Part shown: in pieces, positions 94 to 64,000 of the stretch | Position numbering within the stretch: the stretch's first letter is position 1 | Layout of the letters: the number at the start of each line of letters is the position of its first letter | Source: Camelus dromedarius | Lineage: Eukaryota | Reading direction: 5' to 3' | Assembly (NCBI RefSeq): GCF_036321535.1 | Contig: NC_087436.1 | Location: 122,946,001-123,010,000 of the forward strand | DNA length: 64,000 bases | The notes under the pieces: generated by a model | Seen by the model: the letters and a program-made list of their open reading frames with translations, nothing else | What the model was told of the DNA's origin: nothing | Databases searched by the model: none | Translations under genes and position numbers: made by a program

Positions 94-14634
<14,541 letters not shown>

Positions 14635-34791: not shown

Positions 34792-37700
34792 CTAGCAGGG
34801 GGCAGGGAGGAGTAGGGAGCACGTGTCGTCCCTGGGGCCCCCGGGCGCTGGCCGGGTGGGTGCCGGCCGCAGGGCAAGGTGCGGCAGGGCCCGCAGGATG
34901 GCCAGTGCCAGGCGCACGAGGAGCCGCAGCAGCAGAAAGGCGAAGGGCACAGCGATCTGCATGAGGTGGAAGATGGCCGTGCTGAACCTGGTCAGGATGC
35001 AGGTGGAGGCAAAGGCCAGCAGGCTGGCACAGGGGTACAGCGCGAGCTTGGCAAACATGAAGGCGTGCTCCTGGCCGCCAAAGCGCGCGGAGGGCTGCAG
35101 CGTCTCCCCCTCCTGCAGCAGCGCCGTGGTCCAGATGGCAAACTGGAAGATGCTGGCGAAGAAGATGATGGCGCAGCTGACGCGCACCCTCTCCAGCTCG
35201 TCGTGGGGCTGCTGCGCGAAGGCCGAGGTCTGCTGGTAGGCCAGGGGCAGGCCGCCCACGAAGGCCAGCGAGAGTGTGTTGAGCAGCCCCATGGGCTGCG
35301 TGGCCTTGCGGACGTGCAGGAAGAGCGAGTGGTGGGCAAACCAGAGCAGGCCGACCGTGGCGAAGGAGCCGAAGTAGGCCAGGAAGTGTGGCCCCGACTC
35401 GCTCAGTGCTGCCACCAGGCTGCCGCTGAACTTCTCCCGCACGTCCTTGGGGTCTGGGACGTTGTCTTCGCTGAGGAGTGAGACACGTGGCATTTGCAGC
35501 AGCCGTACTGAGGGCGTGGGCTCAGGGCTGCTGGCCCACCCTGTCCCAGGCCTGAGGGGCTGCATCCTGCCCTCCCCCCCAACTTCAGATGAATGACGTG
35601 CACTGAGTTTTCCTTGATCTGTGCTCACTGCAGGCAGGATACTAAACAATTCAGTGCTCACAAGCTCAAATTTAACTGCATCTTGGGTTTCTCTGCTGAC
35701 TGGCAGCCCTACCTGCTGGCCCCTGGGGCTGGTGAGCAGCCTGGGCCCTGAGCCCTTGGCCCCTCTGGCCCACGTGGGTGGGGGCTTGTGAGGTCTGTCC
35801 ACCCTCCTGCAGCTTCCTGCAGTCCACAGTGGTCCTGCAGATCTGAGGGGGTTTGCCTCTGAGGTTCTGATTCCTGGGCCGAACTTCACTGTAAGGACCA
35901 ATGTGAAGGCACGCTGGGCCCAGGCTTCTCCCCGCATGGAGGTGGTGGGTGCTGTGGAAGGGCTGAAGCAGCCTGGGCCACCTCTGTCCTCACAAAAGCA
36001 GCGGACAGAGACGGGGGGTTTCCTGGGGGTCTGCACCTGGGCCCCTGGGCCCCACAGCCACTCCGTGCTGCCCCCGCTGGGGGGACCTGCAGAATGGCTC
36101 TGGCTGCAGAGCAGAGGCAAAGCCAGCTCATTCCAGAACCACAGGTCTAGGCCTCGGAGACTGGTACCAATAAGCATTTGCTTCCGACTTCTTAAAAATT
36201 CACAAATGACAGTAAGAAAACTCTGCCAAGAGAAAACTGGGAGCATCGTGACTGCAGACTGTCAGAAGCAGAACAGAAAATCAGGGTGTTTCAACACTGA
36301 CAAAGTAAGAACAAACTGGAACCTGACCGAGGAGTAAAACACTACAAAAAAGGACGGAAAGCTGGAAAAGCAGCAGGTAGAACACTTAGAAATAAAAGGC
36401 CAGTAACTCAGGCTGGAGCTCAGACTGACTGGAGGACAGGCCAGGTGGAGCAGAAGAGCTGCAGTGAAGGGTGGGGGCAGGAACTCAGTGGAACTTGGGG
36501 ACCGACATAGGGAGCCGGGAAGCCACCCACTCAGTCAGGTGGGTCCTCAGGGTGGGGCTCCCTCTGGGGAGGGGGGCAGGGAGACCTCAGGGCCTCTGGG
36601 GTTGGAGCCTGGGCAGGTCCTCACCAAATGTCCAGGATGAGCAGCGTGGCCACGATGGCGTAGACCCCGTCGCTGAAGGCCTCCACCCGCTCCTTGCTGA
36701 GAGGCCCATGCAGGTCGAAGGTGAAGAACTCCAGGCTGTGAGCTGGGGGCTCCCTGGGGCCTGCGGGAGTGCAGGGGGAGGAGTGGCCAAGCCCTCAGGG
36801 CCTCGGGGCCAGCTGGGGGTCGCTGCCCTCTTGCCTGAGGGGCCGGAGCATGCAGGCCAGGGGAGGGGACCCTGCAGGGACGCCCGGCTGGCAAGGGTGC
36901 TCCGAGGCCCCCACTCTAGCCTGCCCAGGCACCTACCCACAAGCCTGCCTCGGCACCAGCTGGCGGCCTTGCTGACGTAGGGGAGGAAGATGACTGTCGC
37001 CATCAGCAGGTACGACTGCAGGAGACACGGGTGCGTCAGTGGGGCTTGGCACCTCCACCGAGGGCCGGGCCCAGGAATCCCACCCTGGAGCCATCCGCTC
37101 CAGAGGGAGGGCAGCACAAGCAACAGAAGCAAGACCGGCAGCTCGTTCCCCATCGAGATGCAAACCTGCTGTGCATCAGGGAGTGTTACCAGGAGGCTGG
37201 GAGCATGCGCAAACCTCCTGTCAGAGAAGAACCTCGTGTCCAGCACGTGTGGGAGCTCCTCCAGCTCCACGTCAGAAAGACAAGTAACCAACTGAAAAAT
37301 GGGCAAAGGACTTGAACTGACATTTCTCTGAAGAGAGACGCAGCCCCCACACACAGGGACAGGTGCTCAGCACCACCAGTCCTCGGGGAGACGCGAATCC
37401 AAACCACAAGAGTGCACCGCACGCCCAGGGACAGGCGGCGGCGAGGACAGGGAGGCTGGAGCCCTCGCACACTGTTGGTGGGATGTAAGATGGCTCTGCT
37501 GCTGTGGAAAACAGAACAGAGGGTCCTCAAAAAATTAAAACAGATAATTACCAGCAATTCCACTTCTGGGTATAAACCCCAAAGAACTGAAAGCAGGGTC
37601 TCGAAAAGACATTTGCACACCCACGTTCACGCGTCACTATTCACAGCAGCTGAGATGCAAGCACCGTGGACGCAGGATGTGGCCCGTCCACCAGTGGCTG

Positions 37701-51119: not shown

Positions 51120-52070
51120 ACCAACAGACACCGCGGACCCCACCAAACCGACGGGCGAGGAGCTCCCCGCTGCCCGGCGTCGCGGGAGTTCGATCGCTCG
51201 GGGACGTCCCCCGACCCGCTCCTCCGCCGCGCGGCCTGGCACACGCCGCCCTCCGTACGGCGAGCCCCTGAGCAGCAGTCTCCGCAGAAACAGCCACGTG
51301 GGGACGGTTGGGAGTCGGGCTGGGAGCCGGGCTACCTGGGCGGGAGCCGCCGCAAACACCTCCCGCGAGCTCGACGGCGGAAGTCCGTCTCGAGGCCGGC
51401 GCGCCGCGCACGCGCGAACCGCGACCAGCGCTCTGCGCACGCGCAGCCGCCGCGAGGCGGAAGTGAGGCGCTACGCTCTTCCGGGCGGCGTCGCGGCCCC
51501 GCGCCTGCGTCGCGCCGTCGGGCGGAAGCTGGGGCGGCTCGCGGCCGGCGGTTGCCCAGCGGACCCGGACGCCGCTGGACCCCGAGCCCTCCGCCCGGCG
51601 CCCGCTGCCGGCCGCCGCCATGTCGCTGCTGCAGTCTGCGCTCGACTTCCTGGCGGGCCCGGGCTCCCTGGGTGGCGCTGCCGGCCGCGACCAGACTGAC
51701 TTCGTGGGGCAGACGGTGGAGATGGGCGAGCTGCGGCTGCGGGTGCGGCGCGTCCTGGCCGAGGGTGAGGCCGGGGCCGGGGGCACGAGCCGGGCGCGGG
51801 GAGGGTCGCCGCGGGGCCGAGGGTCACGGCCGGCCGGGAGGTGGCTGCTGAGGGTGAGGCCGGTGTAGGGCTGGGCACTTCCTTGTCGGAGGCCTGGGGT
51901 CAGGCTGTGGCAAGGGAGTGGAAGCAGCAGGCGTGGGGCCGACCGCGCCTGGGGGAGAGGCTGTGGCGGTGGGAAGGACGTTGGGCAGGCTGGGGGCGTG
52001 AGTGCGGGGCCACAGTGCGGGCGGTGGCGGGGCGGGAGGGTGCTGCAGGGCTGCAGGCTGGAGTCTGGGG
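51120..52070. promoter_or_regulatory. Bidirectional CpG-island promoter of GAK/TMEM175
   Basis: Dense CpG. NRF1 site TGCGCACGCGCA at 51434-51445, ETS/GABP site CGGAAGTG at 51458-51465, further CGGAAG cores near 51377, 51479 (minus strand) and 51523, and E-box CACGTG at 51295-51300. Divergent gene starts on each side. Confidence 0.9.
51336..51440 (-). other. TMEM175: Probable non-coding exon 1 of TMEM175
   Basis: Minus-strand donor CAG|GTAGCC at 51335 inside the CpG island shared with GAK. The 5' end is approximate because no TSS data are available. Confidence 0.5.
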
Positions 52071-61000: not shown

Positions 61001-63331
61001 CCTGTGTGTCTCTCAGAGCTGCCCTTCACCTTCTCTCCCGCCTTTGCTGAGAGTTGTGGGTTTCATGATGTCATTCCCCACTATAGGGAGCTAGGAAAAG
61101 CGAAGCAAATGGAATCAACAGAATTACATTGATTTTCACTGTTAAACTAACTCCACTAAGTTGTGATGTTTTGTGCTTTTCTGTGTGCTGTTGGGTTTGA
61201 TTTGCTAACGCTGAATTTTATTTAGAATTAACGCTTTAAGGATTCTTTCGTCCATGTGCATGTGTGATATTGGTCATTGATTTGTTTTTGGAGAACTGCT
61301 TTTGGTTTTGTTGATTTTTCCCTCATTAATCTCGTTCTTATGTTCATTTCCTTCCTGCCTCAAAGCAAGATGTTTAAAGGGCAATATTACACAAATTGGG
61401 GCTTATTACTATTGTAGAAAACAAACTGCGGCCACAAGCCCAGCCTGTATTTTACTTAGTAAAGACATTTTTTAAGCTCATTTTTGAGTAAAATCACAGC
61501 ACTGAACTGACACGTGTATTTTTCTGACTTTCAGGAGGGTTTGCATTTGTATATGAAGCTCAGGATCTGGGAAGTGGCAGAGAGTATGCACTGAAGGTAA
61601 AAAGGGTGACAGCATTTTTATGGGGTTTTAGTTCGTTTTAAAGGAGATCTCCAAGTGACATTTTCAGAGATTTGTTCCTATTCTTTATTTTATGTTTCTT
61701 TCTTACAGTCTGTGTCTGTTTGTCTTATTTGTTTATTTCAGCGTGAAGCCATCAGCAGTTCTGAGGACTTTAAAGCTGTGGCTTCCAGCTTTGGGGCGGG
61801 GACCCAGTGGAGGGTGGAGGGTGACCTCACAGTGTTGAAACTGCCAAAATAAGGGCTCCACAGATGCCAGGAGTTTGAAAGCCACTCATGTGAAACAGCG
61901 TGTCACAGTGTACCTGTAAATGGGGGGCGGGGGGCATCTGGCCCACGTCGGGTGCTGGGCGCACAGGCTGGTTTGTCTTGAGACTCGCCGAGGGCTGGTC
62001 TTGGTGCACAGCTGAGCTGGGGGCGTACTTGGACTGTGTTGTCCCAGAGCCAGACCCATGTCTCCCCTCCCTTCCCTCTAGCCTGTTTGAAGAAAACCCT
62101 CCTGTTTTTAGTTTTTCTTGCATCCTTGGATCGTGACCATTTCCGAGGGTCTTTAACCTCTGTCAAGTTTCTACATGAGTCCACGTTAGAACACAGTTAG
62201 GCAGGGTGAGCTCTTAGATGCGTTGTGTTTGTTCTCTTGGATGCAGCGTGGAAAGAGCAAATCTTTCATCTTCTCTCGTGTGTTCTTTCCCGATACAGAG
62301 ATTACTGTCTGACGAAGAGGAGAAGAACAGAGCCATCATTCAGGAAGTTTGTTTCATGGTATCCTTTCTGGGGACTGAGCGCAGACCTGGTCGCGTGGCG
62401 GGGCCTGTGCCCGGCTCCTGACGGCACCCTTCTCGATGTGCTTTCACTGGGCTTCCCTGTGGCGTGTCTCGCACAAGGGACTTTTTTTCTTGTTCTTCAC
62501 TCTCAGGGTGATAAACAGGGAGGGTCTGTAGCTTTGGGAGTGGAGGTGGGCGTCCCTGACAAGAGGTCTACAGGCCCCGGGGGTGGGCCGACCCCTGCCT
62601 CTGCCCTGCGTCTGCCCCTCGTTCCCTGATGTGGCCCACGGCACCCGGCAAGTGGCTGTGCCCCCAGCCCCTCACCAGGCCTGGCTCCATATCGATTCTG
62701 CTCAGGGCCGGGGTCTGTCTCACGTCTCACCCTGGCTGGAGCGCTTGGGGCCTGGGTGTCCGTGCACAGAGGGCCCGTCTTGCTTGCTCCCCACTCCTGC
62801 ACACGTTCTCCCCAAGCTGGGGCCTTGCCCTTTGCTGTCAGAATCAGTTCTCTTCTGTCCTGAAGCACTGTTCACTGTGAGCCTGCCAGCCGCTTGGGCT
62901 GAGGGCGCTCACCTCGCTGGGCTTGAGTGGCTGCGTGTACCGTCACACCTCAGCCCTGCCGCACCCTGTGCTGCTGCCTTGCTTGGCTGGGGCTGGGTGT
63001 GGCCAGCCCACTGGGGTCTTCACCCTAGCCTGTCCTTCTCCTGCTCACACCCCCTGCATCCTGGCTGCCCCCACCCCCCCGCATCTTACTGCTCTGACAC
63101 CCTGCCATGGTGCACTCTTTGGATTCGGTGTTTTGACTTTAGTGCCCTAGAATTGTGTACATGTTTGTTCTCAAACGTGCAGGCTTATACCTTCTCCTTT
63201 AACAAGATCCCCACAGAAAAAACTTTCAGGTCACCCCAATATCGTCCAGTTTTGTTCTGCAGCATCAATAGGAAAAGAGGAGTCGGACACGGGGCAGGCC
63301 GAGTTCCTGCTGCTCATGGAGCTCTGCAAAG
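51620..63331 (+). CDS. GAK: Cyclin G-associated kinase (auxilin-2), exons 1-4; 3' partial
   Basis: Kozak gccgccgccATG at 51620. Exons 51620-51764, 61535-61596, 62299-62358, 63217-63331. Translation MSLLQSALDFLAGPGSLGG...LAEGGFAFVYEAQDLGSGREYALK(69)RLLSDEEEKNRAIIQEVCFMKKLSGHPNIVQFCSAASIGKEESDTGQAEFLLLMELCK gives the NAK kinase N-lobe. Confidence 0.97.
56020..58260 (-). mobile_element. Cluster of antisense L1 remnants with an inserted MLT1 LTR (about 57215-57495) in GAK intron 1
   Basis: L1 signatures tggaatcatgccgtgtggg and ttgctccagcaccgttggtggaaac. MLT signatures gtcctggaggcttggagtccgaggtcagg and ttaatcacctccctaaatgccct...cacattggggg. Confidence 0.65.
58610..58930 (-). mobile_element. L2 3' end remnant
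   Basis: gtgtgtcaggcactgttctagctgctggcaacac...tctacagcctggtgggagagac matches the antisense L2 tail. Confidence 0.6.
58960..61330 (-). mobile_element. Fragmented antisense L1 remnants upstream of GAK exon 2
   Basis: T-rich degenerate L1 ORF2 text (gttgaagaagtttcctttgattcc, tgattacactggccaggacttccagta, tttcatttatggatcatatttttg). Boundaries approximate. Confidence 0.6.
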
Positions 63332-64000
63332 GTCAGGTTCCAGCGGGTCTGAGCCCCGACAGCAGGGTGCGCCTGGGGCCTTCGCTCCTGAGACCCACTG
63401 GTCCCAGTGGAAGAGCGTGGCTAGCTGCCTGGCGGGAGCTCTTGCACCCCCACCCTGCCACGGCCTGTCCCAGCACTGGGGGGAGAGTCCCCCGGGGTCC
63501 CTGCCCTGGGGGCGAGAGCAGAGCTGGCGCTGGGAGGAAGGGTGAGCGCTGGCACCCTCGTGGGCTCTGGGGCAGCAGGAAGGAGCTTGGCCAGGAAATA
63601 GTCAGGCAAGGCTGGGAGCTGGGCCTGTGGGAGCTAGGCAGCTGCCTCGGCCCTCAGGGCTGGGCCCCGTCTGCAGTGCAGCAGGACCCACACCTGGAGG
63701 TCCCTGAGCTGCCCCCGTTCCTGTGGGTGGGGCGGCGTGTTCCCCTTGGAGGCCCCGCCCCGCCCACTTGGTCCCCGTCTGCCTCGTGCTCTGCTGCTGG
63801 CAGTGGACGTGTGTCTCTGTGTTTTCGGCTGTTTGTGTCTCTGGTTCGTGTGCTGTGTTCCCCGTTCACCATCCAGGATGCTTTGGCTTTGATGTTCGGT
63901 TTTAGAGGCTGTGGCTGCCCTGCTGCAGGTGCGTGCGGGCCTGGAGTGCAGGAGGTGCCAGGAGTGGGGCCTGGTTGCCCACATGTGTCGGGGCATCCTT

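What the first reader, a model, noticed from the sequence alone, without database searches (positions are those of the whole stretch)
63316..63318. GAK kinase gatekeeper is Met, not Thr: a natural T123M
Seen: exon 4 reads GAG TTC CTG CTG CTC ATG GAG CTC TGC AAA (EFLLLMELCK). Exon lengths 145/62/60/115 fix the numbering (catalytic K69, alphaC E85, hinge E124-L125-C126), so the ATG is codon 123. Known: human GAK has Thr123 as gatekeeper, unlike the Met-gatekeeper paralogs AAK1 and BMP2K. The small Thr underlies GAK being an off-target of gefitinib/erlotinib-type inhibitors and is analogous to EGFR T790. Inference: this ortholog has converged on the AAK1-like pocket and should resist back-pocket inhibitors. 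ACG to ATG by CpG deamination is a plausible route. It may be lineage-fixed, polymorphic or an assembly error.
Basis: partly seen in the sequence, partly recalled or inferred. Interest (0 to 1): 0.75.

Follow-up and report, generated by a model that had tools for sequence, protein, structure and literature searches.

The report
Camelid GAK kinase has Met gatekeeper
Camels and alpaca carry methionine instead of the usual threonine at the "gatekeeper" position of the drug-target kinase GAK; the change is real, expressed and shared across the camel family, and it probably makes camelid GAK less sensitive to some inhibitors, though nobody has tested that.

Summary
Window 63316-63318 is ATG, and it is codon 123 of GAK. 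Exons of 145/62/60/115 nt have proper splice sites, and RNA contigs confirm the exon 2-3 and 3-4 junctions.

Solved human GAK chains differ from exon 4 only by T to M. The literature names Thr123 as the GAK gatekeeper, against Met126 in AAK1 and Met130 in BIKE.

It is not an assembly error or a private variant:
- Annotated GAK proteins of Camelus dromedarius, C. ferus, C. bactrianus and Vicugna pacos all have Met123.
- Two further DNA samples carry ATG.
- One RNA run of a different haplotype carries ATG in a spliced transcript.

The change therefore most likely predates the camel/llama split.

Thr123 is found in about 119 non-mammalian tetrapod clusters (one frog has Ser). It is also found in primates, rodents, rabbit, marsupials, platypus, polar bear, hedgehog and seven unnamed mammal contigs. 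Four of those seven use ACG, so ACG to ATG at a CpG is a plausible route.

Met is not unique to camelids. An unnamed second mammal, starfish and a mussel have it too.

Other artiodactyls could not be sampled. Reduced sensitivity to back-pocket inhibitors is a reasonable inference but is untested. Interest is moderate: a natural variant of a known kind.

The parts
51620..51764 (+). GAK exon 1 coding part (ATG to donor), 145 nt, codons 1-48 plus 1 nt
   Evidence: GT donor at 51765. The translation is identical to Camelus GAK P0411.
61535..61596 (+). GAK exon 2, 62 nt. It ends with the catalytic Lys69 codon AAG (61594-61596).
   Evidence: The RNA joint 61594/62297 (cut +2) in run X16 confirms the donor.
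62299..62358 (+). GAK exon 3, 60 nt, codons 70-89. It includes the alphaC Glu85 codon (62344-62346) and Met89.
   Evidence: The RNA joint 62357/63216 (cut +1) is.
63217..63331 (+). GAK exon 4, 115 nt, codons 90-127 plus 1 nt. It holds beta5, the gatekeeper and the hinge.
   Evidence: RNA contig 63216-63332 has 0 differences from the window.
63316..63318 (+). Codon 123, ATG = Met, the gatekeeper position (Thr in human and mouse GAK)
63319..63327 (+). Hinge codons Glu124-Leu125-Cys126, unchanged from human

Best explanation
This is the true camel ortholog of GAK (cyclin-G-associated kinase). In it the ATP-site gatekeeper residue Thr123 has been replaced by Met through a single C to T transition, most likely ACG to ATG at a CpG. 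The substitution is shared by Old World camels and alpaca, so it most likely arose in or before the common ancestor of living Camelidae. It is transcribed and spliced normally.

Mechanistic inference, not tested here: the longer hydrophobic Met side chain fills the small cavity behind Thr123 and removes its hydroxyl. In human GAK that hydroxyl takes part in the water and hydrogen-bond network used by gefitinib and by 4-anilinoquin(az)oline probes. Camelid GAK should therefore remain an active kinase, as AAK1, BIKE and several invertebrate GAKs are with Met at this site. It should bind back-pocket and Thr-dependent inhibitors more weakly.
For: Shown:
- ATG at codon 123, with correct exon structure and splice sites.
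- T to M is the only difference from solved human GAK chains in exon 4.
- Synteny with SLC26A1 and TMEM175 upstream supports orthology.
- The spliced exons are 127/127 identical to Camelus (P0411) and alpaca (P0414) GAK. All exon-4-bearing members of that cluster, from C. dromedarius, C. ferus/bactrianus and Vicugna pacos, have Met123.
- Two non-source DNA samples, X12 and X14, carry ATG. RNA run X16, a different haplotype with 8 intronic differences, carries ATG in a high-depth exon contig with correct joints.
- The 70-mer around the codon is held by runs of five coded organisms in 8 studies. This is weak evidence because only 2 words were sampled.
- Thr123 is present in about 119 amphibian, bird and reptile clusters and in all sampled non-camelid named mammals.
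- In a 12-species panel, T123M is the only camelid-specific change at an otherwise invariant kinase-domain site.
- ACG is the codon in 4 of 7 Thr-bearing mammal contigs.

From the literature:
- T123 is the GAK gatekeeper (PMC6312924).
- Thr123 against Met126 (AAK1) and Met130 (BIKE) shapes the back pocket and the water network used by SGC-GAK-1-type inhibitors (10.1101/2020.03.06.976563).
- Thr123 is part of the hydrogen-bond network that stabilises gefitinib (PMC6129943).
- Small Thr or Val gatekeepers explain GAK's capture by back-pocket binders (PMC10888910).
Against: - No biochemical data exist for any Met123 GAK. The effect on inhibitor binding, ATP affinity or activity is inferred by analogy.
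- The contigs used for the read check drop rare variants, so a low-frequency ACG allele in camels is not excluded.
- Pig, ruminants and whales were not sampled, so the age and breadth of the change inside Artiodactyla are unknown.
- Because the CpG is mutable and a second mammal also has ATG, independent origin in camels and alpaca cannot be formally excluded, although it is less parsimonious.
Confidence: 0.85

Rival explanations
1. Assembly or consensus error: the real camel codon is ACG (Thr).
For: A single-base difference at a CpG.
Against: The same Met is in annotated proteins from independent assemblies of four camelid species. It is also in two other DNA samples and one RNA sample of a different haplotype.
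Confidence: 0.01
2. A polymorphism segregating in camels rather than a fixed difference.
For: Contigs cannot show minor alleles. An altered sequence could not be queried, so absence of ACG was not tested directly.
Against: ATG is present in every sample examined, in three Camelus species and in alpaca. Sharing across the Camelini/Lamini split implies an old, fixed or near-fixed state.
Confidence: 0.04
3. Met123 is not camelid-specific but an older trait of a wider clade (for example Artiodactyla or part of Laurasiatheria). The unnamed second Met-bearing mammal would then be another member of that clade.
For: A second mammal (contigs L001-L006) has ATG at codon 123. Its introns align with camel over about 1.5-2 kb, at 67-69% identity. 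No named pig, ruminant or whale GAK could be retrieved.
Against: An intron identity of 67-69% is no higher than camel against another, Thr-bearing contig (L011, 68.5%). In exon 4, L001 is closer to Thr-bearing L010 (6 differences) than to camel (10 differences). The laurasiatherians polar bear and hedgehog have Thr. Recurrent ACG to ATG at a CpG readily explains two origins.
Confidence: 0.15
4. The substitution is functionally neutral. Met and Thr are interchangeable at this site of GAK, with no meaningful effect on catalysis and only incidental effects on synthetic inhibitors.
For: Met occurs in GAK of starfish, a mussel and other invertebrate-like fragments, and Ser in some others. That suggests tolerance. 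No other pocket residue changed in camelids.
Against: Thr is kept in nearly all of the roughly 200 vertebrate clusters seen, which argues for constraint. In other kinases, gatekeeper Thr to Met changes alter ATP affinity and spine stability; this is established knowledge, for example EGFR T790M, and was not tested here.
Confidence: 0.4

Closest known systems
Human and mouse GAK (cyclin-G-associated kinase, NAK family), e.g. PDB 4O38, 4C57, 5Y7Z
   Same: It is the same gene (ortholog). The kinase domain is 93% identical over 335 residues. K69, E85, the hinge E124-L125-C126 and the DFG region are identical. Synteny is the same. The full-length camel protein has the kinase, PTEN-C2 and DnaJ domains (Pfam list).
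   Different: The gatekeeper is Met instead of Thr. A few other substitutions lie away from the pocket (S21A, S26T, L35M, V60L and N74D in exons 1-4).
AAK1 and BMP2K/BIKE (NAK paralogs with a Met gatekeeper)
   Same: Met at the equivalent gatekeeper position (Met126 and Met130), which fills the back-pocket space that is open in human GAK.
   Different: They are paralogs, not orthologs. The hinge residue after the gatekeeper+1 position is Phe (AAK1) or Tyr (BIKE), against Leu125 in camel GAK. The pocket is therefore only partly AAK1-like.
EGFR T790M and other Thr-to-Met gatekeeper mutations
   Same: The same residue class changes at the same structural position, and the same quinazoline inhibitors (gefitinib, erlotinib) are concerned.
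   Different: Those are somatic, drug-selected mutations in a tyrosine kinase. Here the change is a germline difference between species with no drug involved. No resistance has been measured.

Membership tests
GAK ortholog (cyclin-G-associated kinase) | Sequence identity to solved or annotated GAK over the N-terminal kinase exons | tested here: met
   Exon 4 is 37/38 identical to human GAK chains, E=3.5e-19. Exons 1-4 are 121/127 identical to human and 127/127 to annotated Camelus and Vicugna GAK.
GAK ortholog (cyclin-G-associated kinase) | Conserved gene neighbourhood (SLC26A1 - DGKQ - TMEM175 - GAK, as I recall it from human 4p16.3) | tested here: met
   Sulfate_transp+STAS ORFs lie at 9944-12837 (+) and a TMEM175 domain ORF at 34792-36246 (-), both upstream of GAK exon 1 at 51620. 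DGKQ was not checked. The human gene order is from memory.
GAK ortholog (cyclin-G-associated kinase) | Full architecture: kinase + PTEN-like/C2 + J domain | tested here: met
   The window holds only exons 1-4. The matching full-length Camelus protein P0407 carries PF00069/PF07714, PF10409 and PF00226.
Active protein kinase | Catalytic Lys (beta3), alphaC Glu, HRD and DFG motifs intact | tested here: met
   K69 and E85 are in the window. HRDLK and CDFGS are present in camel P0411.
Met-gatekeeper NAK pocket (AAK1/BIKE-like) | Met at the gatekeeper | tested here: met
   ATG at codon 123.
Met-gatekeeper NAK pocket (AAK1/BIKE-like) | Aromatic hinge residue (Phe128 in AAK1, Tyr132 in BIKE) | tested here: not met
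   Camel keeps Leu125.
Inhibitor-resistant gatekeeper variant (T790M-like) | Measured loss of inhibitor affinity or raised ATP affinity | not testable with these tools
   This needs binding or enzyme assays. No paper with GAK and T123M was found.

The most novel reading that the evidence does not exclude
The GAK gatekeeper is a recurrently switched site. A mutable ACG codon has flipped to ATG independently in camelids and in at least one other mammal, and Met is also found in echinoderm and mollusc GAK. In camelids the switch would have been kept by selection, for example through altered kinase activity in clathrin-mediated trafficking or virus entry, rather than by drift. As a by-product, camelid cells would be naturally refractory to GAK-directed host-targeted antivirals.
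Probability: 0.1. Interest if true: 0.6.

Novelty: new variant of a known kind. Interest (0 to 1): 0.4.

Why it matters
- GAK is a frequent off-target of quinazoline drugs and a candidate host target for antivirals. Its inhibitor selectivity rests largely on the small polar Thr123.
- A natural Met123 ortholog that is viable in whole animals shows that GAK function tolerates the classic resistance-type gatekeeper change.
- It offers a ready-made control protein for probe selectivity studies.
- It warns that camelid cells or animals may respond differently to GAK inhibitors than human or mouse systems do. This is my own inference, not a tested result.
- It is also a clean example of a CpG-driven, possibly recurrent, substitution at a pharmacologically critical residue.

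Tried and rejected
- Broad mammal sampling was difficult. A search with a frog GAK kinase domain returned only amphibians, birds and reptiles. A 210-aa mammal fragment returned few mammals because of the length filter. A 60-aa region of a frog GAK that is identical in mammals finally gave primates, rodents, rabbit, marsupials, platypus and camel, but no other laurasiatherian among the 120 listed of 959 hits. All three searches are now used.
- Naming the second Met-bearing mammal failed. No paper cites its SRA run numbers. Exon and intron distances to seven other unnamed contigs were not decisive. No diagnostic residues were found.
- Several encoding-contig runs were not sent because the service was busy.
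- Run X19 (organism B, RNA) did not reach exon 4.
- I did not fold the protein. At 93% identity to solved human GAK, a model would add nothing about pocket chemistry with the outputs available.

Full report
**What is in the sequence**

The window reads GAG TTC CTG CTG CTC ATG GAG CTC TGC AAA, with ATG at 63316-63318. The exon 63217-63331 translates to KKLSGHPNIVQFCSAASIGKEESDTGQAEFLLLMELCK.

I located the three upstream coding exons at 51620-51764, 61535-61596 and 62299-62358. Every internal boundary has AG...GT.

The spliced product places Lys69 (AAG), Glu85 (GAA), Met123 (ATG) and Glu124-Leu125-Cys126 exactly as claimed. Solved human GAK chains (4O38, 4C57, 5Y7Z) match exon 4 at 37 of 38 residues, and the only difference is T to M.

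Upstream of GAK lie a sulfate-transporter gene (Sulfate_transp + STAS, 9944-12837, + strand) and a TMEM175 exon (34792-36246, - strand). That is the neighbourhood I recall around human GAK, so this is the ortholog and not a paralog or a processed copy.

**What is known about the residue**

- Thr123 was mutated as the "gatekeeper" of GAK to build analog-sensitive alleles (PMC6312924).
- Thr123 is contrasted with Met126 of AAK1 and Met130 of BIKE as the reason for GAK's distinctive back pocket and water network (bioRxiv 10.1101/2020.03.06.976563).
- In the gefitinib complex, Thr123 belongs to the water-mediated hydrogen-bond network that holds the drug (PMC6129943).
- GAK's small gatekeeper is used deliberately in back-pocket inhibitor design (PMC10888910).

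**Is the Met real?**

Earlier notes of this scan called the genome a camel, and I tested that. The spliced exons are 127/127 identical to annotated GAK of Camelus (P0411) and of alpaca (P0414).

The 90% cluster that holds them contains only camelid proteins: Camelus dromedarius, C. ferus, C. bactrianus and Vicugna pacos. Every member that includes exon 4 has Met123.

Contigs of four public runs were laid on 61400-63900:
- Two DNA samples not flagged as the source (X12, X14) span the whole stretch. They differ from the window only at 63380, so they carry ATG.
- An RNA run (X16) comes from a different haplotype, with eight intronic differences. It has a 117-nt exon-4 contig (63216-63332, word depth about 143) with no difference from the window.
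- X16 also shows GT..AG joints for exons 2-3 and 3-4.

The allele is therefore transcribed and spliced as read.

A 70-mer centred on the codon is held by runs of five coded organisms in eight studies. That is weak evidence, because only two words were sampled.

Assembly error is excluded. A rare ACG allele cannot be excluded from contigs, but sharing between camels and alpaca makes an old, fixed state by far the simplest reading.

**How unusual is it?**

- An exhaustive profile-free scan with exon 4 found 76 relatives, mostly with Thr.
- All of about 119 amphibian, bird and reptile GAK clusters have Thr, apart from one frog with Ser.
- Thr is also present in primates, many rodents, rabbit, three marsupials, platypus, polar bear and hedgehog.
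- In a 12-species kinase-domain panel, T123M is the only camelid-specific change at an otherwise invariant position. The other three camelid-specific sites (281, 307, 335) vary elsewhere. No other ATP-pocket residue differs.

Met is nevertheless not unique to camelids:
- Starfish (Asterias) and a freshwater mussel (Potamilus) GAK have it.
- So does an unnamed mammal represented by many recent sequencing runs (P0002/P0196, contigs L001-L006). It also uses ATG, together with Arg128 and Leu164.

The second mammal's introns are about 67-69% identical to camel. That is no closer than another, Thr-bearing contig, and its exon 4 is nearer to a Thr-bearing contig than to camel. Convergence is therefore more likely than shared ancestry, but I could not name the species.

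I could not retrieve pig, ruminant or whale GAK, so the position of the change within Artiodactyla stays open.

**Mutational route**

Seven Thr-bearing mammal contigs use ACG (four), ACC, ACT and ACA at codon 123. Both Met-bearing mammals have ATG. A hypermutable codon would also explain recurrence.

**Function (inference)**

- The kinase motifs are intact (K69, E85, HRD, DFG).
- Met at this site is compatible with NAK-family catalysis, as in AAK1, BIKE and the invertebrate GAKs.
- Replacing Thr with Met removes the hydroxyl used in the inhibitor water network and fills the small cavity next to it.
- I therefore expect weaker binding of gefitinib/erlotinib-type and 4-anilinoquinoline inhibitors. 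By analogy with other Thr-to-Met gatekeeper changes, ATP affinity or spine stability may also be altered. None of this has been measured.
- No paper in the library mentions GAK with T123M, or GAK gatekeeper with camel.
- The pocket is only partly AAK1-like, because Leu125 in the hinge is kept.

**Verdict**

The change is lineage-fixed in camelids and rare among vertebrates, but it is not unique and is probably recurrent. The functional claim is plausible and untested.

It is a natural variant of a well-known kind at a pharmacologically important residue. It is useful as a control protein and as a caution for inhibitor work in camelid systems. It is of moderate rather than high interest.

Noticed in passing
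L001:2307-2421 (also L002-L006; proteins P0002, P0196): A second, unnamed mammal has ATG (Met) at GAK codon 123, with Arg128 and Leu164. It is seen in contigs of many recent runs (SRR31744756/57, SRR35083078/157/195, SRR34641888; 67 index blocks). Introns are about 67-69% identical to camel. This is probably an independent T to M change.
   Followed up: partly
proteins P0020, P0197 (Asterias), P0027 (Potamilus), P0106 (Gastrophryne), P0071/P0075/P0076: The gatekeeper state varies outside vertebrates. Met occurs in starfish and a mussel GAK. Ser occurs in one frog and in some unnamed invertebrate-like fragments.
   Followed up: partly
window 62356-62358 (codon 89): The regulatory-spine position 89 is Met in camel, human, marsupials and non-mammals, but Leu in mouse and other rodents. 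The published 'L89' spine residue therefore refers to the mouse sequence.
   Followed up: partly
window 63380: Both independent DNA samples (X12, X14) read T where the window has C. This is an intronic SNP or a private base of the assembled animal.
   Followed up: no
window 62753, 62856, 62872, 63126, 63159: RNA runs X16 (labelled reproductive system metagenome) and X19 (organism B) share five intronic differences from the window. This suggests both come from another camel species or haplotype. They also contain unspliced intron sequence.
   Followed up: no
window 9944-12837 (+) and 34792-36246 (-): Two large ORFs carry sulfate permease + STAS domains (SLC26A1-like). A further ORF carries a TMEM175 domain. 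The CpG-rich stretch at about 51400-51620 just before the GAK ATG looks like a shared TMEM175/GAK promoter region.
   Followed up: partly
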